IMG/VR virus record: IMGVR_UViG_3300038463_000730
Location: 62,001 to 126,000 of that record
Strand: one strand, 5' to 3'
Length of the DNA stretch: 64,000 nucleotides
The notes beneath the pieces are model-generated. The model was not told the origin of the DNA and made no database searches. It was given only the letters and a program-made list of their open reading frames with translations. The translations under genes and the position numbers were made by a program. Every line of letters starts with the position of its first letter. The first letter of the stretch is position 1. This document shows, piece after piece, positions 1-36,873 of the stretch.

Positions 1-129
1 ATCAATCCTCTTCTGTTCAAGCTCGTGTCAGAAGAATCGACTTCATACACGAAAGGTGACATAACGGGTAAATTGATTCATGTACAGTATGAACGCATCG
101 ACGATACATTGGAAGCGTTTACTCATTGA
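1..129 (+). CDS. 3' end of hypothetical protein (partial, enters window)
   Basis: Frame 1 is open from base 1 (INPLLFKLVSEES...DTLEAFTH) to TGA at 127-129, overlapping the next start (TTGA). Confidence 0.6.
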   Translation: MNPLLFKLVSEESTSYTKGDITGKLIHVQYERIDDTLEAFTH

Positions 130-572
130 GCACTGTGATGTTGATCGGCCAGGCTGCTGTTGGGTATGATACCGGCATGCTGACTATGAACGTGAAGCTA
201 TGCTCAGTAATCATCGTGACCGATTCAATCTGTCAACTGATAGGTGAGCCGGATAACGTAACTATTCCAGGCCCACCGAGAACAATACTCGCTCATGGTG
301 ATGGTGGCGTCATTGCTGCGTTCTACGATGACGGTAGATTAGAACTGGTCGATACAGCAAGAGAAACCGGGCTTGCTTTGTATCGGCTAACGAAACAATT
401 CAAGATATCATCAATGAGTGAGAGCCCGGTTGTCATTCGTATCTCGATGGCTCAACACACCATCACGATCATGGATGACATGAAGCTAAGTTGGACTGGT
501 AACCAATCTCTAGAGTTAAAACTAGTACAAGATTACATGAAGCATTTTGCTAACGCGGAGGTGATGGCATGA
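126..572 (+). CDS. hypothetical protein
   Basis: 148-aa ORF, coupled by TTGA and ATGA overlaps on both sides. Confidence 0.7.
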   Translation: MSTVMLIGQAAVGYDTGMLTMNVKLCSVIIVTDSICQLIGEPDNVTIPGPPRTILAHGDGGVIAAFYDDGRLELVDTARETGLALYRLTKQFKISSMSESPVVIRISMAQHTITIMDDMKLSWTGNQSLELKLVQDYMKHFANAEVMA

Positions 573-1000
573 GCGCAAGTGAAACAGATGCGGCAAACGA
601 GGAAATCAAAGCTCTTCAGGCTCGGGTCATAGACTTGGAGACAAAGTATTCCTATGCGATCGAACAGATTCATGATCTAGGTGTTCGGTGCAAACTTAAC
701 CGAGACAATGATCATCCTTCGTTCAAGATCGATCCTGAACATGTCTTCAAAGTAGAAGAGGCGCTTACGAAGATCTATAAGGGACCGACCAGCCCGTCTC
801 GGTTCCGGCTTAGTCCAGAGGCCGAAGCGAAGGCCGGTGCATTCATTACGAAACATAACGAGTTGCACCGGGGTAAATACCAAGGCGCGATCGGCGGAGC
901 GCTAACATTTACTTTCACCGATACAAGCATCGGCCAGATCCAAAACGTCGAATGCTATTGTGGCGATAAAGAGTGCATCAACGCCGATGAGGTATGGTAA
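569..1000 (+). CDS. hypothetical protein (N-terminal coiled coil, C-terminal CxCG)
   Basis: 143-aa ORF with GGAGGTG RBS; GAIGGALTFTFTDTSIG...ECYCG tail. Confidence 0.75.
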   Translation: MSASETDAANEEIKALQARVIDLETKYSYAIEQIHDLGVRCKLNRDNDHPSFKIDPEHVFKVEEALTKIYKGPTSPSRFRLSPEAEAKAGAFITKHNELHRGKYQGAIGGALTFTFTDTSIGQIQNVECYCGDKECINADEVW

Positions 1001-1299
1001 TGGCTGCTAGAAAAACAGCCAAGCCTGAGAAACGGTATGTTGTAATATGTATGCATGATGGTGGATTGCGCCAGGTCTATACACAGAAGTCTTACGATTA
1101 CGCTATCGCCATTGCCGGGCTCTATTGGATGAGCCGTGACCTGATGTTCGATCCGAATTCAAAAGAAGTATTTTTAGTGGACCCAAAATACTTCGATCCT
1201 GACGATCTCGTTCTAACTCGTAAGAGAGGCAAAATCGCTTACGTATCTTACAGCGATACTCAGATCTGGATTGTTCAGGAAGGTAACCACTGCCTATGA
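1000..1299 (+). CDS. hypothetical protein
   Basis: TAATG overlap favours a start at 1000 rather than 994. Confidence 0.7.
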   Translation: MAARKTAKPEKRYVVICMHDGGLRQVYTQKSYDYAIAIAGLYWMSRDLMFDPNSKEVFLVDPKYFDPDDLVLTRKRGKIAYVSYSDTQIWIVQEGNHCL

Positions 1300-1724
1300 A
1301 GGCTACGTTTCATCCCAACGGTTTCTTCGTTCGTGTACTGCACCAGTTCAGTAACGGGATGCGACTTCGTCTACACACATGGCCCGCAGATCGCTCGGAC
1401 AGATCGGATCCACATGACCATCGCACGTGGTTCATATCACTCCCACTCTGTGGCAGATTCATTGAACATCGTTATCGGGAGGTTCCGGGCTCGATACCTA
1501 TTTACAAATGTCGCGTTACAACTGGAGCTGAACGATTGGATGTTCATCGTGATGGGCAGTCCGGTCTTGAACGTATCGAGACGAAAATTCGGTATCCCGG
1601 TATTCCGTATTATTGTTCGAAGGAAGTGATTCACTCGTACAGCCCAGCACGGAAGCGATTCGCTGCATCACTTGTGTTGTTTGGACCAACGATCGGAAAG
1701 ATACCGAAGGCTTGGATTATTTGA
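1296..1724 (+). CDS. cupin-fold metalloprotein (cysteine-dioxygenase-like)
   Basis: RLRLHTW...PHDHRTWFISLPLCGRFIEHRY...IHSY...SLVLFG: HxH plus distal His cupin motif. Confidence 0.7.
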   Translation: MKATFHPNGFFVRVLHQFSNGMRLRLHTWPADRSDRSDPHDHRTWFISLPLCGRFIEHRYREVPGSIPIYKCRVTTGAERLDVHRDGQSGLERIETKIRYPGIPYYCSKEVIHSYSPARKRFAASLVLFGPTIGKIPKAWII

Positions 1725-2029
1725 AACTTATTAGTTTTTCAATGCTTAGAAGGCTAGTTCGCGCACGTCTTAATGCATCATCAAATGAGATAGTATCTCA
1801 ACATTACAATGTCTCATTGAGCTAAATGTAATTGACGTGCTGTTGCCATGAATTTTGGCATGCTCCATCAGTCTATTTGTTGGTACGAACAATTGAATAG
1901 TTTCGTTAACTACGCTGGTCCCAAGCATAGTTACACAATATTCGCACTTTAAACATCCATAAAGTTTATATGGAGCGGGTAGCCAACTTCACTTAATTCT
2001 AACAAGCAACCTTTGCATCTTAACATCAT
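1717..2029 (-). pseudogene. frameshifted Zn-ribbon protein remnant
   Basis: Three consecutive frames read MMLRCKGCLLE.. / ..KLYGCLKCEYC.. / ..FDDALRRARTSLLSIEKLISFK*; adding two bases would give one ORF of about 104 aa. Confidence 0.4.
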
Positions 2030-2063
2030 ACCTATACGATGTTATTCTTCGTTTTGGAGCAGA

Positions 2064-10413: not shown

Positions 10414-11283
10414 TTACATCCTTGTCAGATCTTGTAGCCAAGCGCCCCACGCCACCGGGTTGCCACCCGTTCCGGTAAAGTTACGAACTTGAATTTGTAC
10501 CTGCCCACTTGTAAATATAGCTTGCGCAGAATAACTCGTGCTTGATCCGATATAAATCGGATTTATCAACGGGTACCCGGGAGGGGTCGGAATCGATCCG
10601 GGTGGCGCAGGAAACGTGATCGATGTTGCGTTGGCGTGGAAATCAAGATGCGTAGAAAATTCGTTACCAGCACCATCTTGGCCAACGATCGCTACCTGCC
10701 AACGTCCCGGTCCTTGTGGAGTACGTGCTAATATTGTGTGCCATGCGCTATCTGTCGTTGTAATCGTTCCAGCAGCCGATGATGCCGGGTACCCTGTACC
10801 ATAAGCCATGATCGTTTCGGTTGCGCCGATTTCAAGTTTGTTTCCTGCACCACCGTACTCGTTACTAGGGATACCACCTAGTCCACCAGTAATTGCCGTG
10901 ATACTTTCAGGAAACCAATACTGTCCTGCTTGACTCCATGCCAACACATAACCATCTGTCGGAACGGCATTTAGAATACTCCTGCCTTGAAGACCAATAA
11001 CAAGTTGGCTAACGCTGTTTCCAGATAGGTCTCCACCAAACACTACTGATCCGAACGGAGATTCGGTCCAACTAGTGTTTAACAGACTAGACCCTAGCTG
11101 CCATAGTGTCTGTTCATTTTGAGTATAGACAAGCATTCCTTCTTTTCTATTAAGCATCGGAATGCTATCACGATCGGTAGTATTGGTTCGAATCTGAAAT
11201 CCGCCGTATCCATCGATGTCATCGTACATCGGGAACTGGCCATTGTTTTGTGGCTTAATCTTGCTTATCAGAGGTATTGGCAT
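10414..11283 (-). CDS. virion/tail-fibre-associated protein
   Basis: True start MPIPLISKIKPQNNGQFP at a TAATG overlap; RDSIPMLNRKEGMLVY motif; one GGDLSG...GYVLAW shaft repeat. Confidence 0.7.
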   Translation of the reverse strand: MPIPLISKIKPQNNGQFPMYDDIDGYGGFQIRTNTTDRDSIPMLNRKEGMLVYTQNEQTLWQLGSSLLNTSWTESPFGSVVFGGDLSGNSVSQLVIGLQGRSILNAVPTDGYVLAWSQAGQYWFPESITAITGGLGGIPSNEYGGAGNKLEIGATETIMAYGTGYPASSAAGTITTTDSAWHTILARTPQGPGRWQVAIVGQDGAGNEFSTHLDFHANATSITFPAPPGSIPTPPGYPLINPIYIGSSTSYSAQAIFTSGQVQIQVRNFTGTGGNPVAWGAWLQDLTRM

Positions 11284-12308
11284 TATTCCACCGTCACCGT
11301 TGTTGCACCGAGCCCGACGTTGTCGCTGACCCACAGTTGATATGTATCGACGTAACCGAAAGCGTTGGTAACCGAGATGCTGTTCGATACTAACGAAAAG
11401 CCTCCCGCGAATCCTCCGACGATGAACGTTGGAGTTCCGTAAGCAGTACGACACGCAAAGTAAATATGCTGGGTTCCACTGGCTGTAGTTGTAAATTGAG
11501 TTGAGCGCGTGTTGGTTAAGAACTGTCCAGACAAACTTTGGATGAATGCTGCCGTGTTGCCACCAGCTACGCCGGGACCGTAAAATGTTCGCTGAACCCA
11601 TTCATAGGTTGTTTGTGATGATTTCGTAACGACTCCTCCGTTTGAGGTCAGCGTGAATGTTACCGTTCCACCAAACACAAACTGATCATACGTATGAATA
11701 CTAGAGAAAGATGTTGGTGTCAGAATAACATTCTGTGGTGGGTTACCGGCATTATCGGTCAACACAGCCGTTACGGGAGACGTAGAATACGATGCAGCAA
11801 ACGCCGGATGAACTACCGGTTGGCCAACTTCGGCAAACGTGCCACCAGATAATGACACGACATAGGCAGGTAAAATCATGTCTTGAGTCAACCTACTGAA
11901 CACCGGATTCCCAGCCGGGTTCTCAATCACGGCGGCATATAACTGATTGATAACCGGAGGAAGAGAAGTAGATAGAGAAGTTACGTATTGATTTTTTGTC
12001 GCATCCCACGTCAATGCCGCTTTATCTATCGGTGTCATCGGCGAGATCGGATTACCGTAGAGGCCAACTACTATCGGGTTTGGATAGGTTCCAGCCAGGT
12101 CGCCACCAGCGAGCCCGGTTGCAATTACGTTACCAGTTCCGATGATTGGAGTCGTGATAGTATAGTCGATTGTAGCTGGTAGACTCAGTTCACTAGGTGT
12201 GTAACTGGAGAACTCGGCTGTAAAATCTGGCGTATTTAGAGATGTCCAGTAGACGTGCATCGATGGATTTGCCACCAAAGCAGCCCACATAATGTATTGT
12301 GTAGTCAT
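11283..12308 (-). CDS. virion/tail-fibre-associated protein
   Basis: AGGDLAGTYPNPIV repeat shared with the 1956-aa fibre; beta-rich C-terminus. Confidence 0.7.
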   Translation of the reverse strand: MTTQYIMWAALVANPSMHVYWTSLNTPDFTAEFSSYTPSELSLPATIDYTITTPIIGTGNVIATGLAGGDLAGTYPNPIVVGLYGNPISPMTPIDKAALTWDATKNQYVTSLSTSLPPVINQLYAAVIENPAGNPVFSRLTQDMILPAYVVSLSGGTFAEVGQPVVHPAFAASYSTSPVTAVLTDNAGNPPQNVILTPTSFSSIHTYDQFVFGGTVTFTLTSNGGVVTKSSQTTYEWVQRTFYGPGVAGGNTAAFIQSLSGQFLTNTRSTQFTTTASGTQHIYFACRTAYGTPTFIVGGFAGGFSLVSNSISVTNAFGYVDTYQLWVSDNVGLGATTVTVE

Positions 12309-12384
12309 GATCCTGAACTAAATACGTGTTTATTAGTTACGCTTCGTTCCTTCTGCATATCCACGTATTTCATAAGGAAAACAT
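12309..12384. promoter_or_regulatory. divergent promoter region with 9-bp inverted repeat
   Basis: AAATACGTG (12320-12328) / CACGTATTT (12362-12370); the same element lies 11-14 nt before each divergent ATG; AAGGA RBS on the plus strand. Confidence 0.55.
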
Positions 12385-15300
12385 ATGGCAACGGTCTACC
12401 CAAATCAGTTAGACACCTTGTTAAGTCTCACAGGAAGTGTTCAAGGTGTTCGAGATAGCGTAACTCCAATAAGCGCTACAAATATCAACACGCTAGCTAG
12501 CGCGATGATTCAACTCGAAACCGTTCTAGGTAACGCACATGGACTAGGCGGTGCGCCCCAAAGTATTTACGGCACAGTCGCAAATCGGCTAAATATACTG
12601 GAACAGATCGTCAACCAGGAAAGTGGAGCTGGTAACGTCGTCGTGTTCGGATCTGCCGAAATTGGTCAGACAATCATCTGGAACGGCTCGGTATGGACGC
12701 CTGGAACGAACTTCATCAACCAGAACATCCAAACGTCTGGTGAGTTAGTCTCCGGCCCGGCACTCAGCACGGCCAACACGACCGGTTTGTCTCAGCTCAC
12801 AGGAAAGCTGATTCTTAACGCGATCACACCGTTGAAAATATCCGACCCTAATCAAGGTATCATCTACTTTGATCAGACAGCTGCCCAGTTCTTAGTTTCA
12901 CAAAACGGCGGCTCATACATCCCACTTGTAGCAGGTGGAGGTGGTAATGCGGGTGGAGACCTAGCAGGCCTGTATCCGAACCCTTCTGTAGTTCGACTCT
13001 CCGGCGCAAACGTTCCGATCGGGTCCAGCTTAACCACCGGAAACGTTCTCCAGGTAGACGGGTACAGCTCTCTTACGTACGGGCCAATCAATCTTGGTGG
13101 TGGCGATGGATATGTCGTAGGTATTCTTCCGGCTGAAAATCAGGGAGCACAGACACTAGGTGGTGACCTGTCCGGCACGACCGAAGCGGCATTCGTACTT
13201 GGGCTTCGCGGTATCCCTATCTCGCCAACCAGCCCAAATGCTGACCAAGTGCTTACGTACAACGGAACGTACTGGATTCCATCAGATATCCCGGTTCCAA
13301 CAATCTACCTTTCAGGAGATGTTGTTGGTCCTAACACGGCAACGGTCGTTGAGAACATTAACGGGGCATCTGTACCACCGGCAGGCGGACTTATTACTGG
13401 CAACGTTCTTCAAGTTACCGGATTCGGTAGTTTGGGATACGGCCCGCTCGATTTGAGTGGCGGCTCAGACTATATTACTGGTGTCCTCCCGGCAGCAAAC
13501 CAAGACGCACAATCCATGTTTGGTGATGTCCATGGCAGCACGAACAGTTCGACTGTTATTGCTATCCAAAACATTCCAGTTAACAGCGGCAGTGTTTCGG
13601 TTGGACAAGCGATGTTCGGAACATCATTCAACGAATGGGGTCCGGCAACAATTTCTGGTGACATTATCTCTAGCAACGTGACACCAGGTTTGCTCACGGT
13701 TGGATATTTGCAGGGCAACTATGTACCGGCTGGAGCACTAGTAGAGGGACAGTTTTTTGTTGCAACATCGACGAACAGCTGGGCACCTACTACAATTTCT
13801 GGAGATATCAGCCCTAGTAACACGACCCCTGGTCAGCTTTCTGTTACAGGTATCCAAGGTTACTCGTTCTCGTCCTTTGCTCCCACCAAAGGGCAATTCG
13901 TCGTCGCTACAACGGGCGCAGGTTATGGACCAGTTACAATCAGCGGTGACGTTTCGGAATCTGGCACGATTCCTGGCAAACTTACTGTCTCCGGTATCAC
14001 GGGTGTCACGATCAGCGGTTCTCCGTTAGCGGGTAACGCGATCGTCGCCACGTCCGGAACGGCAGCAAGTTGGTCCAATGTTACGAACATTGGCGGCGTT
14101 ACGATTAGCGGTACTCCGTCAGCCAATCAGGTCATCGTCGCAACATCTAGTACGGCAGCATCGTGGCAAATAAACAGCCCGACCATCAACGGTGTAACGA
14201 TCAGTGGTACTCCGACAACCGGGCAGGTATTGGTTGCACTTACCAGCACGACTGCTGATTGGCAAACCTTCGGTGGAGCGTTCGCTGCGGGCGGAGATTT
14301 GTCCGGCACCTCGTCGTCACAGACTGTTATCAAGATACAGGGCACACCGGTTGTCAACACGGCTCCGACATCAAATCAGTTACTTCAGTACAATGGAACA
14401 AACTGGACACCTACAACAATTACATTGGCTGGTGATGTCACGGGTGGTCTAGCTGCTACCACGGTAACAAAGATTCAGGGACATTCCGTTCTATCGACAG
14501 CACCGTCTACTGGACAGGTTCTAGAATGGAATGGTTCGGCCTGGTCACCATCGAATGTTACAGAGATCCAGGGCTTCCCGGTTTCATCCGCAACACCACA
14601 AAATCAATACACATTGATATGGGATGCAGCAGACGGATACTGGAAGCCAGAGAGTCCGCTCGGCGGACCGCCATCAGGCCCGGCAAGCGGAGACCTCAGT
14701 GGATTCTATCCATATCCGATCGTCACCGGACTTGACGGTTACCAAATTGCATTCGGCGATCTAGGCCCAGACGAACAAGGATGGGTTGTTACATGGTCGT
14801 ATATCGATGGGTACTTCATTCTCGCGACACCGTCAAGCGGACCTCCATCCGGAATGGCCGGTGGAGATCTGTCAAGTGCCTATCCTAATCCGACTGTATC
14901 AAAGATAAATGGCAGCTCCGTTCCAGCCGGTGGTGCGCTAATAACTGGTAACGTTCTACAGGTTACCGGTACATCCGCTCTTGGATATGCTCCGATCAAT
15001 TTGGCCGGTGGTGCAAATTACATCACCGGTCTACTGCCTACTGCTAGCCAAGCTCAACAGACAATGGGTGGTGACCTGACCGGCACGACCGGTAGTGCAA
15101 CGGTCGCCTCGATCCAAGGACACGTTTTCACAACGAGTGGAACGAGCCCTGGTTATTTCATCATCGCGAACTCAACGTTCGGATACCAACCAGTTCAAAT
15201 TACTGGTGATGTTGCGGCTTCTGTTTCGACAATCGGAAAACTATCCGTCAATGCACTTAAAGGAATCACGCTCGGTGGAACGACTCCATCTGCTGGATAC

Positions 15301-18255: not shown

Positions 18256-18264
18256 AGGAATACA

Positions 18265-20895: not shown

Positions 20896-20903
20896 AGGAA
20901 ATA

Positions 20904-23795: not shown

Positions 23796-23805
23796 TGGAG
23801 AATAA

Positions 23806-25659
23806 GTGAGTCAAAATAGCGCAAAAAATGCATCAGTTCCAGCCGGGCCAGCTGGTGGCGATCTTGGTGGTGATTATCCAGATCCATCAGTAAACGCAAT
23901 CAATGGAGTCGTCGTTACTGGTACTCCGACTGCTGGCCAAGTTCTTAAGGCAACATCTTCAAGCGCAGCAGATTGGCAAACGCTCGCTACAAATACATTG
24001 CCGATTACATTTCAGCCATCCGGCACAGCTCATAGTAATGTGTTTGTAACCGAGGCAGCTCTCAATACAGCTGTGTTAGCAACGTTCGGGGCTCAAACAG
24101 TCTACGTCGATTTGAACCAGTGCAGCGGCGCCTATACTACAACAACAGCACTTAATATTGGTGAGTTTCTAATCGGTGTACCGTTTGCAAACAACGGACT
24201 AACTCCAGTTTTAACCCTTGGTAACACGGTCACGATCTATAACTTTGGTAACAATACATACAACAATGACGCGGTCGAAATTCGTGACATTCGACTTAAA
24301 CAACAGAGTGGTCCTAACTTCGCTCCGTTGCAATTCTTACGATTGACTGGTGACACGGTCATTTACAGCAATGATTCGAGCGGGTTGTATAACGTTCCAC
24401 CGATAGGCGGAGGCAGCTATGCTGTATTGGAAGCTTTCGATCAATCAGTAATAGGAGAAGGTTTACCTGTTATAAATGTTGGTTCGGCTACCCTTAATAT
24501 CTACCTAAATGGCAGCTCCACATTGAATGCTGGCGCCTTGACAATATCAGGCGGAACAGTAAACATCTATGTTAATTCGGCTTCAGCAACGGTTGACACG
24601 AGTTATATCGGTATGTCAGGTATCGCGGTTTACTTCAATAGCTCGGTTGTTTTTAATGGTGGAGCATCGGGTGTAGCGAACATCATGGCCGGGAGACCGA
24701 CAAATCAATCGCCTATCACGGCAGCCGGTACACTTGAAGGCGTAGTTAATTTTGGAAGCGATACGACAGGAATAACAACTGGAGCTAGTGCCAATTTCGC
24801 CACAATTAGTGGCGGAGATCAAAATGTTGTTAGTGGCATCTATGGCGTTATTGGTGGCGGAATTCTAAATAACGTGTCTGGCCAATATAGTTCTGTTGTT
24901 GGTGGAGACTCAAATATCGCAAATGGTAACGAAGCGTTTGTTGGCGGAGGCGTTACCAACTATGCCAGTGGTCAATACTCTGTTGTATGCGGTGGCCAAG
25001 CCAACGTCGCCGGAGGTTACCAATCTGCCATTGGTGGTGGCTTTGGTAATATTGCAGATGGACAAGCATCAGCTTGTTTCGGTTATGGTAATAACGTAAC
25101 TTCTTATGCATTTGCTACAGGAAGCTATAATGATGTAAGTGGTGCATGGGGAGTAGCTCATGGCTACGGTTCCCTAGTTCCAAGATTTGGTCAATTCGGA
25201 CTAACATCGTCAGGTACTAACCTGTATAATATCGGTGACTCTCAATCTAACGTAATGACATTGGCTAACGTACAGTCTACTGTCGGTTCACCATTTTATT
25301 TGCTAACTGCCGGGTTTACAGAGTTTAGCGCTGTTAATCAAGTTGCCAGTGCCAATCAATATTACTCAATGAATATTCGAATAATCGCAATGGCTCGCAA
25401 CGCAGCGGTCGGGCCGGTAACATTCGTTTGGGAAGTGCTGATGCACACCGCTTCAGGTAACGTCGTAATCGACTCGGCTGTGCAAATGCTGGCTAGCCCG
25501 GCCCAGACTGATCCGTACGGAACAGGCTGGACATCATCGATCACGGCTCCAGGTGGGATGACATTACGAATCAGTATCGACCCAGGTGCAGACGCGACAA
25601 ATACGCTTAACGGTATGGCTGAATTAAAATGGGCCGAGATTTCTGGCTTTCAACAATAA
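23806..25659 (+). CDS. tail fibre/adhesin with Gly-rich beta-roll repeats, paralog 3
   Basis: GGAG RBS with GTG start; AGGDLGGDYPDP repeat; shorter repeat block; ends AELKWAEISGFQQ. Confidence 0.75.
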   Translation: MSQNSAKNASVPAGPAGGDLGGDYPDPSVNAINGVVVTGTPTAGQVLKATSSSAADWQTLATNTLPITFQPSGTAHSNVFVTEAALNTAVLATFGAQTVYVDLNQCSGAYTTTTALNIGEFLIGVPFANNGLTPVLTLGNTVTIYNFGNNTYNNDAVEIRDIRLKQQSGPNFAPLQFLRLTGDTVIYSNDSSGLYNVPPIGGGSYAVLEAFDQSVIGEGLPVINVGSATLNIYLNGSSTLNAGALTISGGTVNIYVNSASATVDTSYIGMSGIAVYFNSSVVFNGGASGVANIMAGRPTNQSPITAAGTLEGVVNFGSDTTGITTGASANFATISGGDQNVVSGIYGVIGGGILNNVSGQYSSVVGGDSNIANGNEAFVGGGVTNYASGQYSVVCGGQANVAGGYQSAIGGGFGNIADGQASACFGYGNNVTSYAFATGSYNDVSGAWGVAHGYGSLVPRFGQFGLTSSGTNLYNIGDSQSNVMTLANVQSTVGSPFYLLTAGFTEFSAVNQVASANQYYSMNIRIIAMARNAAVGPVTFVWEVLMHTASGNVVIDSAVQMLASPAQTDPYGTGWTSSITAPGGMTLRISIDPGADATNTLNGMAELKWAEISGFQQ

Positions 25660-25688: not shown

Positions 25689-25979
25689 ATGATTACAGTT
25701 ACATCGACAACCAACGCTCCCGGTACAACAATTCGGGTTCACTCTATCTGTTTGAACTTCACGTTGGCCGATTCCTTCGTAAACCTGTCCGTCAGATTGC
25801 TTGATGGATACGGGCAGCTCATTCGTCTGCCTCAGCCTGTACGTCAGATGACGCCAACTGAGACAAACGCACTGATGGCACTCGGAGCCAACGCAAGCGA
25901 AACACTATCACAGTTTGTCGCACGCGCAGCCGCTCCGTACATCGAAGCTGTCTACGGCATTACGTACACTACTGTATAA
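25689..25979 (+). CDS. small protein closing the fibre cassette (possible fibre chaperone/accessory)
   Basis: 96 aa with AAGGA RBS; role inferred from position only. Confidence 0.55.
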   Translation: MITVTSTTNAPGTTIRVHSICLNFTLADSFVNLSVRLLDGYGQLIRLPQPVRQMTPTETNALMALGANASETLSQFVARAAAPYIEAVYGITYTTV

Positions 25980-25988
25980 TCCGGGCCG

Positions 25989-26540
25989 TTACAGCATAAT
26001 CGTATAACGTTCGGCGCGATCGAGGACGGAGAGGACTTCCTTTTCCGTCTTTCCGCCTATGTAGACCGGGCCAGATTCGATCGATTTGAGTTGTGGCACG
26101 GACGGATTCGATCTAGGCGCGAGACCGGTGATTGGAAATGTTGCGTGCAAATTGATTGCAGGAGTCACGATCTGGTTCAGTACAGAGAAACCACGAAGCT
26201 GACTCGGTATGAATCCTGTTTGTGGACTGACCGAAAACGATTGAGATCCACCAAAGAAGATATTCGCCCGTGAAGGCGCCATACGTTGTGGCCTGATACT
26301 ACAATAGGCGTAGAACACTTTCGGGTAATCAAGGAATAGTTCGTTGATTAGATGATTGTCACGAACATAATTAGGCTCATCTTCGCGCCCGGTATAGTTC
26401 CAGCTTCGCTCGACAATCACGATACGTGACCCGTACATCTTTTTCAAATGCTCGAAGTCAAAGATACAATTCTGTATCTTCTTTTCTAGTTTTTTAGAAC
26501 GAATCAGTGCCTTCGGTTTCGCCGATTTTACCGATTTCAC
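25989..26540 (-). CDS. hypothetical protein
   Basis: 183-aa ORF, GTGA overlap. Confidence 0.65.
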   Translation of the reverse strand: MKSVKSAKPKALIRSKKLEKKIQNCIFDFEHLKKMYGSRIVIVERSWNYTGREDEPNYVRDNHLINELFLDYPKVFYAYCSIRPQRMAPSRANIFFGGSQSFSVSPQTGFIPSQLRGFSVLNQIVTPAINLHATFPITGLAPRSNPSVPQLKSIESGPVYIGGKTEKEVLSVLDRAERYTIML

Positions 26541-29054: not shown

Positions 29055-30350
29055 TTACAAAATCGTAGCGGCTTCCGTTGCCAATGGTGATCTTTCACCC
29101 TTGCTGAATGTAACATGCCCTGACAATTCTGACTTTCTGAACTTCTCAACAACGTATGTTAATCCGTTATTTATTGCGTCTAGGTTTTGGGAGTCGATCT
29201 GCTCGATATCTCCCGTTAACACAATCTTTGTCCCATGACCGGCTCTCGTCAAAATAGTCTTTACTTCATCCTTAGAAAGGTTCTGGCATTCATCGATGAT
29301 AATCATCGCGTTCGGAATTGAACGACCACGAATGTACGTAAGAGCATTCATCTCGATACGTCCTTTTTCGCAGTACATGTCCATCATAACTTGCCATTTC
29401 TCTTTTGACTTCGAGCTGAACAAATACTCAAAGCTGTCCATCACGGCTCCCATCCATGGCTCAAGCTTTTCGCTCAATGAACCAGGAAGATAACCGATAT
29501 CATTCCCCATCGGTTGAATCGGGCGGTACACAATCAGCTTGTCGAACTTCTTGCGCTCTAGCACCATTTCTAGTGCCGCTCCGACGCTGATCAATGTCTT
29601 GCCCGAACCTGCCAAACCGATCAGGCTGACTAATGGTAGCTTCGGATCTAAAAGCATATTGATGGCGTACGATTGCTCACGGTTACGAGCCTCCAGACCC
29701 CATGGATTCTGGTTCTGAATGACGCGCAAACGGTCGCCGATGCGGCGTCCAATCGCGATGCCGAGGCCCGATTCATCGTTGATCTGAACACATTCATTTG
29801 GCTGAATCTGGAGCTTACTTCCTTGCAAGTCAAAGAAGCCCGTGTCTCGTAACGTAACACCCATCTTCGTATCGACGATAGTCTGGTAGCCAGTATACAG
29901 ATCGGTAAGGTTTGATGAACCCTTCTCGTAGTTTTGCGAACCCAATCCGATTGCTTTCGCACGGATTCGCAGGTTAATGTCGCGGCTTACCAATACGGTT
30001 TCGCGATCTTTGAATTTCAATCGATACGCTTGGGCACATGCCAAGATCTTGTTATCACCGTAGCTCGCGTCATCTCCAACACGTACAACGTGTGTCTTGG
30101 AGTCGATGCGAAGGTTGATATTTCCGTCCAAACGAATTGGCTTCGTGACGTTTGCTGTGGCGCAGATCGCGTCTAGCAAACGAATTGTCACACGAGCATT
30201 TTTGCCAGCGGCATTCGATAGCTTTTTAATCTTATCGAGTTCGTCTAGGACCGTGATCGGTATGATCACGTCCGACCCCTTGAATTCCTTGATGGCTTGT
30301 GGGTCATGTGCGAAAACAGATGTATCGATTACGTAATTTTTTCTAGGCAT
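29055..30350 (-). CDS. phoH: PIN-PhoH (PhoH2/YlaK-type) ATPase
   Basis: PIN: VIDTSVF, ELD, DNKIL, VSRDINLR; PhoH: GLAGSGKT, GYLPG, YIRGRS, IIDECQN, LTGDIEQID. Confidence 0.93.
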   Translation of the reverse strand: MPRKNYVIDTSVFAHDPQAIKEFKGSDVIIPITVLDELDKIKKLSNAAGKNARVTIRLLDAICATANVTKPIRLDGNINLRIDSKTHVVRVGDDASYGDNKILACAQAYRLKFKDRETVLVSRDINLRIRAKAIGLGSQNYEKGSSNLTDLYTGYQTIVDTKMGVTLRDTGFFDLQGSKLQIQPNECVQINDESGLGIAIGRRIGDRLRVIQNQNPWGLEARNREQSYAINMLLDPKLPLVSLIGLAGSGKTLISVGAALEMVLERKKFDKLIVYRPIQPMGNDIGYLPGSLSEKLEPWMGAVMDSFEYLFSSKSKEKWQVMMDMYCEKGRIEMNALTYIRGRSIPNAMIIIDECQNLSKDEVKTILTRAGHGTKIVLTGDIEQIDSQNLDAINNGLTYVVEKFRKSELSGHVTFSKGERSPLATEAATIL

Positions 30351-30819: not shown

Positions 30820-31164
30820 CTAAACCATAATACGATATCTTTTGCAATATAAGGCAGCTGGGCACTTCTCTTGCGAATACGAAGGGTATGTATTAAATTC
30901 ATGATCAAACAATGCTATGCCCCACTGTCCCGCTAAGAATGCAAAAATAGCTTTCCCATTACGATTAACTTTGTTGATACAGAATGTTGTCCCACAATCT
31001 TTACATGTATAGATTAGGTTGGCTACGGCCGAATCAATCGATCTTGATCTAGTATGCCATTGGTCTTCAGTTAGATGTTTGAGGCGTTTTAGTATTTTGT
31101 TTGCCTCAGCTATTATCCTAGGTTGCTCGGAGTCAAAGATAATGTTCCCACCATCAATACTCAT
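30820..31164 (-). CDS. hypothetical protein (CKDC motif)
   Basis: 114-aa ORF, ATGA overlap. Confidence 0.65.
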   Translation of the reverse strand: MSIDGGNIIFDSEQPRIIAEANKILKRLKHLTEDQWHTRSRSIDSAVANLIYTCKDCGTTFCINKVNRNGKAIFAFLAGQWGIALFDHEFNTYPSYSQEKCPAALYCKRYRIMV

Positions 31165-31571
31165 GCCATTACTTGGAGCTTCCTACAGACAACGATTGGG
31201 TCGATCCGATCTGTTCCCGTCAGCGCCATCAAGTGACGATCGAATCGGACCGTTTGAATCGTTCGACATCCGAGCCAAAGGCAATACGTTCCACTAGCTT
31301 CATTGATATCGAACCGCATCTTGCATTGTGGATCGGTACAGTCGATAGAAAAGGCGTCAACAAACGATGCTACTGGTAATAGCGTGCCATCTTTGAAATT
31401 TTGATGATGGCTCACATCATACCAGTCCCGGTCGAAGTGATGCCGGTAAGTCTTTTCCAACACTTAAGTCTTTTCCAACACTTCGCGACAATGCTGTTTC
31501 AACCTATTCGTTTCAGGGCTACCTTTAATCATGTAGCCAGCTACAACTACATCATTTGCCTCTATCGACAT
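31161..31571 (-). pseudogene. hypothetical gene interrupted by an in-frame TAA created by an 18-bp tandem duplication
   Basis: Starts at a TAATG overlap with nrdJ: MSIEAND...CREVLEKT*VLEKTYRHHFDRDW...; removing one repeat unit restores a 130-aa ORF. Confidence 0.7.
31447..31482. repeat. exact 18-bp tandem duplication
   Basis: (TAAGTCTTTTCCAACACT)x2. Confidence 0.95.
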
Positions 31572-34072
31572 TACCCGCATTTACTATAGCCGCAATTGAC
31601 ACACTTCAGGCATCCCTCCTGATAGATAATTGCGTCCTTCTGACAAGTCGGACAAACCTTGTCCGATGCGGACTTCGTCCCATCCGTAATGTACGATTTC
31701 AGGACTCGTCCCATGACTCGCGAGAAGCTGGTCATGTCGGAAAACTTGTCCTTCTGGAGTTGCTCCATAACGAATTGTGGCGGGCAACCATGACGAAGAG
31801 CCAGCGAAATGGTTCGCGTAAAAGCTCCGTAGTTAGCATTCTCGAAAACGCTCGCAATGTTCTTGATAACCATCTCGTCGTCATCTTGACCTACCACCAA
31901 GTTGTAGGATGTCACTCCATCAACCTTGCCATTCTTCACAATTCTACCGTGTTTGTACTTGTTCGGGATATCGACATACTTCGACAACCCTCCGAATACC
32001 TCGTACGGTCGTCCGTTCAGCATCCCGACAAAAATGGTCCAACCTTCGCCCTGTACTTTTGCCTTCTTGATATCGCAAGGAAGCTCGACCGGGCGTTTCG
32101 GAGCCATCATGATTTCGACATCGGTGGGCCTGATCATCGGATCTCGGGCTTGCTGTTTCTTGTGCTGATCTTCGCTGACCAATACACCGGAGCGACAACC
32201 ATCACGGTAAACTGTAAAGCCTTTGCATCCCTGCTCCCACGCCATCATGTAAACGTCCTTGACAACATCTACAGTCGTGTCAGCCGGAAGATTACATGTC
32301 TTCGAGATCGAGTGACAAATCCACTTTTGCGCCGCTCCCTGAAGTTTGGCCGAGGCAACCCAATCGATCTCGTTCGACGTCGCTCCGTAATAGGGTGATT
32401 TCGAAATATCGGTCTCACCTGTCACGTCCATCCACTGTTTCACTCCGGGATGGTAAACAGTAAACTCCTGCCACGAATCACCCATCGCATCAACGAAGTC
32501 CGTTCTGGCATTCTTGTCGTTCGGATTGATCTTCTTCCGACGAACATACGACAGAAGATACGGCGGTTCAATTCCGGAGGTTGTTTGGGTCAATGTACTG
32601 ACCGACCCAGCCGGAGCGGTCGTGGTCAGGGCGATATTCCGACGTCCATTCTTCTTGTAAAGCTCATAGACCTCCGGTGCAGCATCCCAAATACGCTGAA
32701 GGAACGGGTGGTCCTTTTCCAAAGCATGATCAAAGATCGGGAATGCTCCACGCTCGCCAGCCAGGATACACGTCGAACGATACGCATTGACCGCCAATCC
32801 CTTGTAAATCTCTTCTGTAACCCGGATCGACTCATCGGAGCCATAACGGATGCCGAGGGCTGCTAGGGCGTCTCCAAGCGCCGTAATGCCTAATCCTGTG
32901 CGTCTACCGCTCAAGCAGGCCTTCTTGATACGTTCCCAGAGTTCAACCTCCAGACGTTTGATATTGGCAGGCTCGGGATCTGCATGGATCTTGGCCAGAA
33001 TCCGATCGACACATTCGGTTTCCAAATCAATAATATCATCCATCAATCGTTGAGCCTGAACAACCACTTCACCGTACTTCTTGTAATCGAAACTTGCTTT
33101 GTCAGTAAACGGATGTTTCACGAACCCCATTAAATTAACCAGCAATAGACGACACGAGTCATCTGGTGAAAGAATAATCTCTCCGCACGGATTCGTGCTC
33201 GTGCTGCGGAAGCCGAAGTCCTTGTAGATATCGGCAGGGCTGTACTTCTCGGCTGTGGACCAGAACAAGATTCCGGGCTCGGCCGAGGCATGCGCGCATT
33301 CGATCAATTGATCCCAAACTTCACGGGCACGCACTTTTTTCGAAACCAATGGATCAGAAGAATCGACTGGCCAACGTTGTTCGTATTCCTGATCGTCTTT
33401 AACTGCCTGCATAAATTCATCCGAGACACGAACCGACACGTTCGCTCCGGTGACTTTCTTCTTGTTCTGTTTGATCTTGATGAATGTTAAGATCTCAGGA
33501 TGGTGAATCGAAATGGTCAGCATCAACGCGCCACGACGACCGTTCTGAGCGACCTCGCGACATGTAGCACTGTACCGTTCCATAAAGATACCGATGCCAT
33601 CGGTTGTCTTCGCGGCATTCTTGGTCGGAAGCCCTTTCGGGCGAATATTCGACAGGTCGAAACCGACTCCTCCACGACGTCGCATGATATGAGCTTGCTC
33701 TTGATCCGTTTGCATGATCCCGGCATAGCTATCAAGCGGTGAGTTCAGCACGAAACAGTTCGAGATCGACATAATCTGATACGGATTACCAATCCCGGCC
33801 ATAGGAGATCCCTGCGGCACAACATAGCGGAAATCCTTGAGTAGATCGTAGATCGCCTGCTTTGATAACGGATTGGCATAGTTCGACTCGATGCGATGGA
33901 ATTCACTCGCTAGACGCCAATGCATATCGTCCGGAGTCAATTCGTCATAGACGCCATCTTCCGCAGTCAATGCGTACTTATCAGGAAACAACTTTGCGGC
34001 GAATTCATCGCCTCCAAAGTAGGTTAGTGAGGCATCTAGGACTTGTTGATAATTGTATTTTGATTTTGTCAT
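31571..34072 (-). CDS. nrdJ: class II (adenosylcobalamin-dependent) ribonucleotide reductase
   Basis: SNCFV, GGVG, TNPCGEI, RRTGLG, TTAPAGS, SISKTCN, KGFTVYRDGCR; C-terminal TSCPD-like region and CPTC..EGCLKCVNCGYSKCG; no beta-subunit gene nearby. Confidence 0.92.
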   Translation of the reverse strand: MTKSKYNYQQVLDASLTYFGGDEFAAKLFPDKYALTAEDGVYDELTPDDMHWRLASEFHRIESNYANPLSKQAIYDLLKDFRYVVPQGSPMAGIGNPYQIMSISNCFVLNSPLDSYAGIMQTDQEQAHIMRRRGGVGFDLSNIRPKGLPTKNAAKTTDGIGIFMERYSATCREVAQNGRRGALMLTISIHHPEILTFIKIKQNKKKVTGANVSVRVSDEFMQAVKDDQEYEQRWPVDSSDPLVSKKVRAREVWDQLIECAHASAEPGILFWSTAEKYSPADIYKDFGFRSTSTNPCGEIILSPDDSCRLLLVNLMGFVKHPFTDKASFDYKKYGEVVVQAQRLMDDIIDLETECVDRILAKIHADPEPANIKRLEVELWERIKKACLSGRRTGLGITALGDALAALGIRYGSDESIRVTEEIYKGLAVNAYRSTCILAGERGAFPIFDHALEKDHPFLQRIWDAAPEVYELYKKNGRRNIALTTTAPAGSVSTLTQTTSGIEPPYLLSYVRRKKINPNDKNARTDFVDAMGDSWQEFTVYHPGVKQWMDVTGETDISKSPYYGATSNEIDWVASAKLQGAAQKWICHSISKTCNLPADTTVDVVKDVYMMAWEQGCKGFTVYRDGCRSGVLVSEDQHKKQQARDPMIRPTDVEIMMAPKRPVELPCDIKKAKVQGEGWTIFVGMLNGRPYEVFGGLSKYVDIPNKYKHGRIVKNGKVDGVTSYNLVVGQDDDEMVIKNIASVFENANYGAFTRTISLALRHGCPPQFVMEQLQKDKFSDMTSFSRVMGRVLKSYITDGTKSASDKVCPTCQKDAIIYQEGCLKCVNCGYSKCG

Positions 34073-34780: not shown

Positions 34781-34799
34781 ATTTTCCTATCGTGAAATA

Positions 34800-34989: not shown

Positions 34990-35023
34990 ATACTTCCGCG
35001 ACACTTCCGTAACAGGCCCAAAA

Positions 35024-35185: not shown

Positions 35186-35187
35186 GG

Positions 35188-35475: not shown

Positions 35476-35501
35476 CAAACCTCTACTAATAGTCCTAAGT
35501 A

Positions 35502-35792
35502 TTAGTCCCTGCTGGTAACATTTTTGTTGTAGCGTTCTTCGCCAACCAAGTTGGCCCGATAGTTCACATCAGTGTTCATTCGGTGCTTCATATCTCGGAC
35601 GTCAGCCTTAACCTTGTTTTTGAGGTCTTGACCAGTAAGCTCAACAATACCCCGCCCGCTACCACCCGAAATAAGCCTCTGTGCCTCGGATCCACACGTC
35701 GGACAAACTGGTACAGGCGCCGTAATAGAATAGAAATCTTCAAACTCGTGGTTACATTCTTCATTCTTACATTTGTGTTCATAACTGGGCAT
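35502..35792 (-). CDS. FmdB-family zinc-ribbon protein
   Basis: MPSYEHKCKNEECNHEFE...CPTCGS..QRLIS. Confidence 0.85.
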   Translation of the reverse strand: MPSYEHKCKNEECNHEFEDFYSITAPVPVCPTCGSEAQRLISGGSGRGIVELTGQDLKNKVKADVRDMKHRMNTDVNYRANLVGEERYNKNVTSRD

Positions 35793-36183
35793 CACGTGCT
35801 TCCTTTGCTTTACGTTGTTTTATATAGAAAGATTCGGTAAGATTCTTCAGACCCTCTGCTGATTGCATGGCATTTTTGATCATCGGATCAGCCGTAACAC
35901 CAATCTTCGAGACTGGTATTTCGAACATAACACCATCCGATGTATGGTAGCACCAACGGCTTTCTTCCATATCAATCTTGGATGATGTACGTGGCTTAAA
36001 ATCTTGATCAAAGACAATTGATAACGTCTCATCACTTTGTACATAGCGTATGAAATGCACTAGCTCGACCGTTACATCAAGATGAGTCCCTAAATGATTC
36101 ACAAGGTCTCGACCGAGCTTCATGAAGTCATCGTACTTCTTGGTCTCGGTAATTGGTTTCATTTCTCCAACAGTGCGCAACAT
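35779..36183 (-). CDS. hypothetical protein
   Basis: 134-aa ORF in the operon. Confidence 0.65.
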   Translation of the reverse strand: MLRTVGEMKPITETKKYDDFMKLGRDLVNHLGTHLDVTVELVHFIRYVQSDETLSIVFDQDFKPRTSSKIDMEESRWCYHTSDGVMFEIPVSKIGVTADPMIKNAMQSAEGLKNLTESFYIKQRKAKEARDAQL

Positions 36184-36184
36184 A

Positions 36185-36367
36185 TCATTCCTTGAATAGA
36201 ACTAGTTTCTTATTGATTATACGGAATGATATATCTCCGGTCCAGTTTTGTTTGATGAACTGTTTGTAACGAGTATCCTGTACCTTGAAGACAATGTACA
36301 ATTCATCCGTGTTTTCGTCATATTCTACGCGCACGGCCTCAGCTACTTCTTCGAAATCTTCTTTCAT
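36185..36367 (-). CDS. small hypothetical protein
   Basis: Likely start MKEDFEEVAE, after the upstream stop. Confidence 0.6.
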   Translation of the reverse strand: MKEDFEEVAEAVRVEYDENTDELYIVFKVQDTRYKQFIKQNWTGDISFRIINKKLVLFKE

Positions 36368-36378
36368 CTGGTCCGTTT

Positions 36379-36873
36379 CTACATCATCACCATGTACGCT
36401 CGTGACTTCCGAACGCACTCATTGACTATCTGTATAGTCTGCTCCAACGTGACAAACCCTTTGTTGTCAATATACGTAGCCTCGAAACAGTCGCCAAGTT
36501 CCAGGGTTTTGAATAGTTCGCCAGGATTGATACCGCGACGCTTGCCAGGGAAATGCTTCATCATATCTGCTTGATAACAGACCTCAATGGATAGCTTCTG
36601 AACCATAGTCCAGTCTTGAAAGGGCTCGAACATGAATGCTGGTGACGAGAACACCTGGCTCTTTGTGTGACCGATGACTAACTTGATAGAGAAAACCTTC
36701 GTGTTCAACACAACGTACGTGAAGTTATCGTTGTCGTTTTTGGTCGTCAGGATTCGAGACCTATAAATCGTTTGCAGCAATTCATTTTCGTTATCAAGTT
36801 TTCCGGTAATATAGTCTTTTTGTCCATACGACGTGTTCGACCCCGGAGCAAGTGTATTAGGAAGAGTGATCAT
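36379..36873 (-). CDS. hypothetical protein
   Basis: Likely start MITLPNTLAPG; the track start overlaps the upstream gene too far. Confidence 0.6.
   Translation of the reverse strand: MITLPNTLAPGSNTSYGQKDYITGKLDNENELLQTIYRSRILTTKNDNDNFTYVVLNTKVFSIKLVIGHTKSQVFSSPAFMFEPFQDWTMVQKLSIEVCYQADMMKHFPGKRRGINPGELFKTLELGDCFEATYIDNKGFVTLEQTIQIVNECVRKSRAYMVMM

What the first reader, a model, noticed from the sequence alone, without database searches (positions are those of the whole stretch)
126..36873. Shared C-terminal tag ([IV]-M-[LVAM]-stop) on unrelated small hypothetical proteins
The C-termini are RAERYTIML (25989-26540), CKRYRIMV (30820-31164), CRKLQVMA (31161-31571), KSRAYMVMM (36379-36873) and FANAEVMA (126-572). 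The proteins share nothing else, and no recognisable enzyme or virion protein here ends this way. Inference: a C-terminal sorting or recognition signal, such as a degron, a capsid-packaging/ejection tag, or a docking motif for a common hub. Caveat: the 126-572 ending overlaps the next gene's RBS and may be incidental.
Basis: partly seen in the sequence, partly recalled or inferred. Interest (0 to 1): 0.65.

Follow-up and report, generated by a model that had tools for sequence, protein, structure and literature searches.

The report
Shared C-terminal tail on phage proteins
About one in eight proteins of this 435-kb phage, drawn from dozens of unrelated small-protein lineages, end in the same six-residue tail, which looks like an address label for a common partner that has not been identified.

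Summary
All five endings are in the sequence, and the pattern is far beyond chance. Across the 434,688-bp genome, [IV]-M-[LVAM]-stop occurs 13-17 times against 0.4 expected. Met at position -2 occurs 47-55 times against 13 expected.

The real motif is broader: [KR]-hydrophobic-x-x-[M/F/L/W]-x-COOH. It ends 79 of 624 predicted proteins against 4 expected (p about 1e-73).

Two of the five proteins (30820-31164 and 31161-31463) are not unrelated. They belong to a family of about 32 small H/CxxC/C zinc-type proteins. The 126-572 ending is incidental, because it is the Shine-Dalgarno sequence plus the ATGA overlap of the next gene.

The tail also ends a second family with a different predicted fold, and about 35 further lineages with no detectable similarity. 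Several observations point to selection on the protein:
- It is locked to the true C-terminus.
- It is encoded by varied synonymous codons.
- It is kept in orthologues of 27-74% identity.
- It is missing from the internal domain of two-domain family members.
- It is absent from the 110-250 kb block of large genes, and 1 of 84 T4 genes has it.

Best reading: a C-terminal docking or recognition peptide for one shared partner. That partner may be Clp-type proteolysis, since the phage encodes three ClpP genes. No partner was shown. The main rival is a recurring structural cap helix.

The parts
25989..26540 (-). 183-aa ORFan ending R-Y-T-I-M-L-stop (tail codons 25992-26009). It fits the full motif. 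It is convergent with 25689-25979(+), so no downstream RBS is involved.
   Evidence: No homologue outside its own genome cluster. No Pfam or PHROG hit.
30820..31164 (-). 114-aa member of zinc-type family C (H30, C54, C57, C107) ending C-K-R-Y-R-I-M-V-stop (tail 30823-30846). A terminator-like hairpin follows it.
   Evidence: AF2 model: pLDDT 75; C-terminal helix 108-113 with pLDDT about 90.
31161..31463 (-). 100-aa family C member ending C-R-K-L-Q-V-M-A-stop (tail 31164-31187). Its stop overlaps the start of 30820-31164 (ATGA), with no Shine-Dalgarno match in the tail.
31447..31482 (-). Exact 18-nt tandem duplication (two copies of AGTGTTGGAAAAGACTTA). Its junction creates TAA at 31464-31466 and cuts off the 35-codon N-terminal part (31467-31571) of the family C gene.
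   Evidence: translation
36379..36873 (-). 164-aa ORFan (a longer start at 36969 is possible) ending A-Y-M-V-M-M-stop. It has the V-M-x core, but position -6 is A rather than K/R, so it is a near fit only.
126..572 (+). 148-aa ORF ending A-E-V-M-A-stop. The last codons are GAG GTG ATG GCA TGA, which form the Shine-Dalgarno sequence (GGAGGTGAT) and the ATGA start overlap of gene 569-1000. It does not fit the extended motif and is judged incidental.
44238..44933 (-). 231-aa protein ending R-R-L-R-V-L-K-stop.
   Evidence: No Pfam family.
44941..45360 (-). 139-aa paralogue ending R-R-L-K-V-L-K-stop.

Best explanation
The endings are one protein-level short linear motif with consensus [KR](-6)-[L/F/Y](-5)-x-[V/I/N/A](-3)-[M/F/L](-2)-x(-1)-COOH. 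V-M-x is its commonest form.

Shown:
- The motif is predicted to form a helix of about 1.5 turns directly after the last core element of the domain.
- It is appended to at least 37 lineages with no detectable sequence similarity. These are small (median 120 aa), soluble, rather basic accessory proteins of this huge phage and of its relatives.
- Two of the lineages are large expanded families with different predicted folds.

Inferred:
- The tail is a docking or recognition peptide. Its two hydrophobic anchors (-5 and -2) and the free carboxylate would plug into one common partner, putting a large and diverse set of accessory proteins under one shared control.

Favoured but unproven partner:
- Clp-type proteolytic machinery. 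The phage encodes a tandem ClpP pair, a third ClpP and a Cdc48/YjoB-like AAA+ ATPase, but no ClpX. On this reading the tail would be a shared degron or tether that times the removal of these proteins.
- Docking of DNA-binding proteins to RNA polymerase or a clamp, and loading into the capsid, remain open alternatives for the partner.
For: 1. Enrichment and register: 79/624 against 4.05 expected. The same pattern ending 1-5 residues before the end occurs only 2-12 times.
2. Independent carriers:
- Family C has about 32 members and family B has 14. Their predicted folds differ: a helix, four strands and a Zn site, against six strands, a helix and a strand.
- hhalign aligns only the last 10 columns of the two families.
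- The other 37 carriers form 35 clusters with no link to B or C once the tails are cut off. That is 37 observed against 3.7 expected.
3. Selection acts on the protein, not the nucleotides:
- 8 K/R codons are used at -6, at least 14 codons at -5 and 10 codons at -2.
- In orthologue pairs, tail codons are 29 identical, 29 synonymous and 38 non-synonymous, and the pattern is kept.
- Paralogues swap M, F, L and W at -2.
4. Conservation: relatives L016, L014 and L005 keep the tail in every orthologue of a tail bearer at 27-74% identity, while the C-termini of tail-less proteins drift.
5. The fold does not need the tail:
- In two-domain family C proteins (g35749, P0031, P0042) the family profile matches the first domain only up to the CxxC region. 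The Cys-led stretches that follow carry no basic-hydrophobic tail. Only the true C-terminus has one.
- Tail-less truncated members are conserved.
- In family B the last 4 residues drop to pLDDT 68, against 92-96 for the domain.
6. Gene-class restriction: 32 of 60 genes at 20-50 kb carry the tail and 0 of about 130 at 110-250 kb. M(-2) is found in proteins under 200 aa almost exclusively.
7. Candidate machinery: three ClpP genes and an AAA+ ATPase, but no ClpX. ClpP in jumbo phages has been proposed to be deployed against the host (PMC7824862).
8. Precedents for C-terminal tethering peptides:
- The XB peptide, the 10 C-terminal residues of SspB, binds the ClpX N-domain (PMC3983244).
- SspB and RssB share a C-terminal XBR motif (PMC7226468).
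Against: - No partner was found. The single complex prediction (E. coli ClpX residues 1-60 in two copies, plus a family B member) scored 0.11 against a mark of 0.32. That is no verdict either way.
- In family C the tail starts one residue after an invariant Zn-ligand Cys and is modelled as a confident helix (pLDDT about 90). This fits a structural role equally well.
- 42 of the 79 carriers are explained by descent within two families.
- The host is unknown.
- Expression timing is unknown; 'early' is only inferred from gene size and position.
- A weak nucleotide bias exists: GTG at V(-3) in 13/27 against 17% genome-wide, and G before it in 25/55. Some tails therefore also carry Shine-Dalgarno-like sequence.
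- The gene calls are my own crude ones.
Confidence: 0.45

Rival explanations
1. Structural cap. The tail is a short C-terminal amphipathic helix that packs on the protein's own domain, or closes the Zn site. It recurs because most carriers descend from a few expanded families whose other residues have diverged beyond detection. It is not a signal.
For: - AF2 models a helix in both families, and in family C with pLDDT about 90.
- The invariant Cys at -8 ties the tail to the Zn site.
- Upstream positions (-8, -11, -14/-15) are also hydrophobic in the singletons, which suggests a longer amphipathic helix.
- 42/79 carriers lie in two families.
- ORFans diverge fast, so failure of jackhmmer does not prove independent origin.
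Against: - The two families have different predicted folds and align only in the tail.
- The register is locked to exactly one residue after the last hydrophobic anchor.
- The internal domain of two-domain members, and some truncated members, lack the tail.
- The strong preference for the rare residue Met (33/79, against 2.1% background) is unusual for simple core packing.
- pLDDT drops at the tail in family B.
Confidence: 0.28
2. Self-association. The tails mediate homo- or hetero-oligomerisation among the tail-bearing proteins themselves, for example by helix swapping. This would build mixed assemblies of DNA-binding-like small proteins.
For: - The tail is hydrophobic and amphipathic.
- The carriers are small, basic proteins (median pI 9.0).
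- There are weak fold resemblances to DNA-binding domains, which commonly act as dimers: AP2/ERF for family B (Z 6.0, rmsd 2.5, 58 aligned) and T4 MotA C-terminal domain for family C (Z 5.3).
Against: Nothing was tested directly. A 6-residue helix is a small interface. The strict C-terminal register is not needed for helix packing.
Confidence: 0.1
3. Nucleotide-level cause. The endings are by-products of the next gene's Shine-Dalgarno sequence or start overlap, or of another RNA or DNA signal at gene ends.
For: - 126-572 ends in GGAGGTGATGGCATGA.
- 15 of 55 M(-2) genes overlap the next start by ATGA.
- GTG and a preceding G are over-used before the ATG.
Against: - M(-2) is enriched 3.5-fold even with no nearby downstream start.
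- All five M(-2) genes in L005 lack close downstream starts.
- Codons at every tail position vary freely, and M, F, L and W interchange at -2.
- The genome's usual ribosome-binding site is AAGGA/AGGAG, not GGTGAT.
Confidence: 0.03

Closest known systems
ClpX-tethering peptides: the XB peptide of SspB and the XBR motif shared by SspB and RssB
   Same: - A short peptide at the extreme C-terminus of otherwise unrelated proteins docks them to one hub, the ClpX N-domain (PMC3983244, PMC7226468).
- As I recall the XB sequence (…L-R-V-V-K, from memory and not verified here), it has hydrophobic residues at -5 and -2, V at -3 and K at -1. That is the spacing of this tail; compare R-L-R-V-L-K at 44238-44933.
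   Different: - XB sits on a long flexible linker and is reported to work regardless of its position in the chain (PMC12373786). This tail abuts the folded domain and is locked to the C-terminus.
- K/R at -6 and the Met preference are not XB features.
- Known XB carriers are a few adaptors, not 13% of a proteome.
- The complex prediction with E. coli ClpX 1-60 gave no verdict.
HbYX motif (hydrophobic-Tyr-X-COOH) of proteasomal ATPases and activators (general knowledge)
   Same: The logic is the same: a conserved penultimate hydrophobic residue, a free choice of last residue, and a need for the free carboxylate at the true C-terminus.
   Different: - The penultimate residue here is M, F, L or W and never Y.
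- The carriers are small ORFans, not AAA+ rings.
- No 20S proteasome is known for this system.
Lineage-specific expansion of about 35 Zn-ribbon proteins in Bacillus phage G (Iyer et al. 2021, PMC7824862)
   Same: A huge phage with some 30 or more tandem paralogues of a small Zn-binding protein, proposed there to be specific transcription factors or DNA-binding proteins. Family C here has about 32 copies, mostly tandem at genome 26-42 kb.
   Different: - The family C profile finds nothing in phage G.
- The ligand pattern here is H…CxxC…C with a C-terminal tail.
- That paper, as far as I read it, does not report a shared C-terminal tail crossing family boundaries.
C-terminal hub-docking modules on diversified viral families: PRANC/F-box ends of poxvirus ankyrin proteins, and the C-terminal clamp-binding tails of T4 gp33, gp55 and gp43 (general knowledge)
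   Same: Variable N-terminal parts carry one common C-terminal element that plugs into a single hub (Skp1; the gp45 clamp).
   Different: - PRANC is a domain of about 50 aa in a eukaryotic virus.
- The T4 tails are acidic-aromatic and are found on a handful of proteins.
- No clamp gene was detected in this phage.
Destabilising non-polar C-termini, and the ssrA-like or MuA-like C-terminal ClpX degrons (general knowledge)
   Same: The signal is C-terminal, apolar and preceded by basic residues. Normal C-termini in this genome favour K, R and E, so the tail is atypical in the direction of instability.
   Different: The last residue is often K, R or E, which does not fit an ssrA-type LAA end. No degradation data exist.

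Membership tests
XB/XBR ClpX-tethering motif | The peptide binds the ClpX N-terminal zinc-binding domain. | tested here: inconclusive
   Complex prediction with CLPX_ECOLI 1-60 (two copies) and a family B member scored 0.11 and 0.07 against a mark of 0.32, which is no verdict. The host ClpX is unknown.
XB/XBR ClpX-tethering motif | The peptide is tethered by a flexible linker and functions independently of its position. | tested here: not met
   The tail follows the last core element directly, with the Zn-ligand Cys at -8 in family C. It is register-locked to the C-terminus. XB is reported to be position-independent (PMC12373786).
ssrA-type C-motif-1 degron | The extreme C-terminus ends in small apolar residues (…LAA-COOH). 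| tested here: not met
   Position -1 is L, K, V, R, E or A in varying proportion. Position -2 is M, F or L.
HbYX motif | Penultimate Tyr after a hydrophobic residue, on a ring ATPase or activator. | tested here: not met
   Codons at -2 are ATG 33, TTY 22, Leu codons 22 and TGG 2; none encodes Tyr. The carriers are small ORFans.
RBS or start-overlap artefact | The ending coincides with the Shine-Dalgarno sequence and start of the next gene, and is not enriched otherwise. | tested here: not met
   Met only by 126-572. M(-2) is 7.4% against 2.1% without a nearby start. Tail codons vary freely.
Single paralogous family (all carriers homologous) | Detectable similarity outside the tail. | tested here: not met
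   True within family C (32 members) and family B (14 members). Between the two families hhalign aligns only the last 10 columns. 35 further clusters have no link. The AF2 folds differ. Undetectable deep homology cannot be excluded.
Phage G Zn-ribbon expansion (PMC7824862) | Homology to the phage G family. | tested here: not met
   The family C profile finds no match in JN638751.1. The tool notes that an empty answer is weak evidence.
Zinc-binding small-protein family (family C) | Four invariant metal ligands in all members. | tested here: met
   H30, C54, C57 and C107 are invariant in 25 aligned paralogues and are kept in external homologues. Metal binding itself was not tested.
AP2/ERF-like DNA-binding domain (family B) | Fold and sequence match to AP2. 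| tested here: inconclusive
   VIA-align gives Z 6.0, rmsd 2.5 and 58/63 residues aligned to 2gcc_A, with other AP2 entries at Z 3.7-4.8. This is below the tool's level of trust. No Pfam hit and no PDB profile hit.
Capsid-targeting or cargo-loading peptides (T4 CTS, encapsulin CLP) | Tagged proteins are present inside the particle. | not testable with these tools
   This needs virion proteomics. The T4 CTS is N-terminal (general knowledge), unlike this tail.

The most novel reading that the evidence does not exclude
A proteome-scale C-terminal address system in a huge phage. About 80 accessory proteins of unrelated folds, many of them looking like DNA-binding factors, would carry one 6-residue tail. 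A dedicated machine would read that tail to destroy, load or recruit the whole set together. Candidates for the machine are the phage's own ClpP1/ClpP2 with its AAA+ or FtsK/HerA-like ATPase, or host ClpX. This would be a viral counterpart of degron or cargo-tag systems, evolved by repeated acquisition of the tail.
Probability: 0.3. Interest if true: 0.85.

Novelty: new variant of a known kind. Interest (0 to 1): 0.72.

Why it matters
Huge phages carry hundreds of small ORFans with no known role. A single short tail that marks about 13% of the proteome and crosses family and fold boundaries has several uses:
- It gives a handle to sort these proteins into a functional class.
- It allows the common partner to be fished out with a synthetic peptide.
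- It allows a test of whether phages control or traffic sets of accessory proteins through one shared tag.
- If the partner is a Clp-type protease, it would explain why such phages carry ClpP genes without an unfoldase.
- It could supply a portable tag for use in that host.

Tried and rejected
- BLASTP clustering with tails removed: no M(-2) proteins clustered at E<1e-4. HMM iteration was needed to find families C and B.
- Megablast of 12 kb of the window against phages: no match.
- Relatives search with the UvsW-like helicase: only two short IMG/VR contigs.
- IMPDH query in IMG/VR and the A3 query in JGI metagenomes: nothing.
- Alignment A1 was too divergent for the search for related loci.
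- ClpP query in genome contigs: only a 34% identical Kangiella match, so no host clue.
- Homologue searches for 30820-31164 and 25989-26540: each protein itself or a 99%-identical cluster only.
- Pfam, PHROGs and Atlas for the tail bearers: nothing. The one exception is a patatin-like phospholipase that also ends in a broad-motif tail.
- Foldseek against the PDB for both models: no match at E<=0.001.
- Complex prediction with ClpX N-domain and a family B member: no verdict.
- Searches of the genome itself found no S41 tail-specific protease, ClpX zinc finger, AAA_2 domain, beta-clamp, PCNA or T4 gp45.
- The cGATATATAg upstream motif precedes tail genes in proportion to their share of all genes (4/28), so it does not set them apart.
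- Chance, non-coding ORFs and composition were rejected by the controls.


Full report
SETTING
The window is bases 62001-126000 of a single 434,688-bp virus record. The genes identified are those of a huge tailed phage. They include a PhoH-PIN fusion, a ribonucleotide reductase, DnaB- and UvsW-like helicases, a tubulin/TubZ-like protein and a glycosyltransferase. No near relative is in the phage collection. No gene finder was available, so I built two crude gene sets for the whole genome: one greedy by codon usage (604 genes) and one greedy by length with start trimming (624 genes, 92% coding). For C-terminal statistics only the choice of stop codon matters.

OBSERVATION
All five endings read as reported. 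Two corrections are needed.
- 31161-31571 is not one open frame. An exact 18-nt tandem duplication at 31447-31482 creates a TAA, and the intact ORF is 31161-31463.
- The ending of 126-572 is encoded by GAG GTG ATG GCA TGA.

ENRICHMENT
- [IV]M[LVAM]-stop occurs 13 and 17 times in the two gene sets, against 0.39 and 0.40 expected from the interior frequency of the same tripeptide.
- Met at -2 occurs 47 and 55 times against 13 expected (p 1e-13 and 2e-18). No other of the last eight positions has excess Met.
- C at -8, K/R at -6, L at -5 and V at -3 are also enriched.
- Among the M(-2) proteins, 42/55 have V, I or L at -3, 38/55 have a hydrophobic residue at -5, and 37/55 have K or R at -6.

THE RBS OR OVERLAP EXPLANATION
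M(-2) is 12.9% where the next start overlaps, 10.1% where it lies within 15 nt, 5.5% at 16-60 nt and 7.4% where none is near. The background is 2.1%. The genome's usual ribosome-binding words are AAGGA, AGGAA and AGGAG, not GGTGA. There is a real but secondary nucleotide bias: GTG for V(-3) in 13/27 against 17% genome-wide, and G as the preceding base in 25/55. Overlap therefore contributes in some genes but is not the cause.

A LARGE FAMILY BEHIND TWO OF THE FIVE
The 13 proteins ending C-x-[KR]-phi-x-[IV]-M-x align with a conserved G-H and a CxxC. HMM iteration brings in 32 members of 90-300 aa. Most lie in tandem at genome 26-42 kb on the + strand, and two are in the window (30820-31164 and 31161-31463).
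- In 25 aligned members the only invariant residues besides M1 are H30, C54, C57 and C107, which is a zinc-type ligand set.
- In paralogues position -2 is M, F, L or W. V-M is therefore one flavour of a hydrophobic anchor.
- A profile search of 1.84 billion representatives finds about 30 small proteins. Some come from other metagenome contigs, and every one ends C-x-[KRE]-phi-x-x-phi-x.

THE MOTIF GOES BEYOND THAT FAMILY
- Without family C, M(-2) is still 42 against 12.5 expected. [IVL]M.-stop is 29 against 2.6. [KR]phi.[IVL]M.-stop is 13 against 0.09.
- The excess is confined to proteins under 200 aa: 39/369 against 3/223.
- A second family (B, 14 members) has its own conserved residues (an invariant P-W) and the same kind of ending.
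- Redefined as [KR]-phi-x-x-[MFLW]-x-COOH, the tail ends 79 of 624 proteins against 4.05 expected (p 2e-73). Without families B and C it ends 37 against 3.7 (p 5e-25).
- The same pattern ending 1-5 residues before the C-terminus occurs 11, 8, 12, 6 and 2 times.
- Controls: 1.6% of 2,194 non-gene ORFs carry it. Shuffling the last ten residues gives 8.6 +/- 3.0 (maximum 21). The other gene set gives 70. Annotated T4 genes in the first 50 kb give 1/84, with M(-2) in 2/84.
- With tails cut off, jackhmmer groups the 37 non-family carriers into 35 clusters, none linked to B or C.
- The free positions show the same tastes in all three groups: V, I, N or A at -3, and L, K, V or R at -1.

PROTEIN-LEVEL SELECTION
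Every tail position uses many codons: 8 K/R codons at -6, at least 14 codons at -5 and 10 at -2. In 16 orthologue pairs the tail codons are 29 identical, 29 synonymous and 38 non-synonymous, and the pattern is retained. Contigs from related phages carry the same phenomenon:
- L005 has M(-2) in 5 of 20 genes, none with a close downstream start.
- L016, syntenic with genome 38-50 kb, has 10 tails in 21 genes.
- L014 has 7 tails in 8 genes.
Orthologues of 27-74% identity always keep the tail, for example K-L-L-V-M-L against R-L-L-N-L-L. The C-termini of tail-less proteins drift freely.

ANATOMY
- Family C: the AF2 model (pLDDT 75) is a helix, a four-stranded sheet and a variable loop. C107 follows, and then a short helix at 108-113 with pLDDT about 90.
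- Family B: the AF2 model (pLDDT 90.6) is six strands, a helix, a strand and a short helix at 88-93. Its last four residues fall to pLDDT 68.
- The two profiles align only over their last ten columns.
- Neither model has a convincing PDB match by Foldseek.
- With VIA-align the best hits are T4 MotA C-terminal domain for C (Z 5.3) and the AP2/ERF GCC-box domain for B (Z 6.0, rmsd 2.5, 58 of 63 residues). Both are below the tool's level of trust, and both are DNA-binding domains.
- Three two-domain family C proteins (g35749 in this genome, P0031 and P0042 elsewhere) give a natural experiment. The family profile matches their first domain only up to the CxxC region. The Cys-led stretches that follow carry no basic-hydrophobic tail. 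Only the true C-terminus has one.
- Some truncated members end just after the last Cys, and their orthologue does too.
- Tail bearers are soluble (5% have a TM-like segment) and basic (median pI 9.0, against 7.9 for other small proteins).

DISTRIBUTION ALONG THE GENOME
Tail genes make up 32 of 60 genes at 20-50 kb and are scattered at 80-110 kb and 250-410 kb. They are absent from about 130 genes at 110-250 kb, where the large proteins lie. Only one carrier has a known domain, a patatin-like phospholipase.

WHAT IT MOST LIKELY IS
The strict C-terminal register points to a terminal recognition peptide whose carboxylate matters. So do:
- the free last residue
- the two fixed hydrophobic anchors
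- the spread over different folds
- the dispensability of the tail for the fold
- the restriction to one class of genes.
This is the logic of the SspB/RssB ClpX-tethering peptides (PMC3983244, PMC7226468) and of HbYX tails (general knowledge).

The phage encodes a tandem ClpP pair and a third ClpP. It also encodes a Cdc48/YjoB-like AAA+ protein (P0044) and an FtsK/HerA-like ATPase close to the ClpP pair, but no ClpX. ClpP in jumbo phages has been suggested to act on host or target proteins (PMC7824862).

I therefore favour a shared degron or tether. This step is inference. The only test I could run, E. coli ClpX N-domain with a family B member, returned no verdict. No clamp gene or PDZ protease was found. 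The main rival is a recurrent structural cap helix. It is supported by the Zn-ligand Cys at -8 and the confident helix in family C.

COMPARISON AND NOVELTY
Expansions of small Zn-binding proteins in huge phages are known; phage G has about 35 Zn-ribbons (PMC7824862). The family C profile finds nothing in phage G. C-terminal docking peptides and degrons are also known. I did not find a report of one tail shared across families and folds by an eighth of a phage proteome in the papers searched. I rate it a new variant of a known kind. The function is unproven.

LIMITS
- The gene calls are my own.
- The host is unknown.
- Only fragments of relatives were available.
- The XB sequence comparison rests on my memory of the SspB C-terminus.

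Noticed in passing
window 31447-31482 (-): An exact 18-nt tandem duplication creates a TAA inside a family C gene. A 35-codon N-terminal piece (31467-31571) is left, and the ORF restarts at GTG 31463. This could be a recent pseudogenisation, a split gene or an assembly error.
   Followed up: partly
window 10414-25659: Five paralogous large proteins (395, 1956, 876, 976 and 617 aa). Three of them end in nearly the same sequence, [RK]-W-[AV]-E-[VI]-[AS]-G-F-x-Q. The 617-aa one has no Pfam hit. They may be fibre- or receptor-binding-like.
   Followed up: no
genome-wide; in the window at about 25672, before 25689-25979 (+): The motif cGATATATAg lies 10-20 nt upstream of about 28 start codons, many of them in the large-gene block at 120-240 kb. 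It resembles a T4-late-type promoter box.
   Followed up: partly
G000 245-259 kb (L006) and 330.3-330.9 kb: A tandem pair of ClpP genes and a third ClpP; a 443-aa Cdc48/YjoB-like AAA+ protein ending …NIGRGRKNIGLGRNSQKD; an FtsK/HerA-like ATPase; and a type IA topoisomerase. No ClpX was found.
   Followed up: partly
window 45363-46769 (-): A tubulin/TubZ-like GTPase. Its only phage-collection match is Bacillus phage G gp138, at 23% identity.
   Followed up: no
G000 49.3-50.6 kb (L004) and L016 9054-9858: A tandem family of 87-90-aa proteins ending G-H-[VIAP]-[ML]-E, conserved in a related contig. It is a second kind of ending with a hydrophobic residue at -2.
   Followed up: partly
window 42569-42901 (-): A 110-aa protein with CPLC…HH…CRDCH. 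It looks like an HNH-type nuclease and was a false hit of the family C profile.
   Followed up: no
window 29055-30350 (-) and 31571-34072 (-): A PIN-PhoH fusion protein, and a ribonucleotide reductase large subunit with a C-terminal TSCPD domain. They flank the two family C genes.
   Followed up: no
G000 46775-47308 (L004:1775-2305): This tail-bearing 177-aa protein starts with a hydrophobic, TM-like segment, unlike most carriers. Its orthologue in L016 keeps both that segment and the tail.
   Followed up: no
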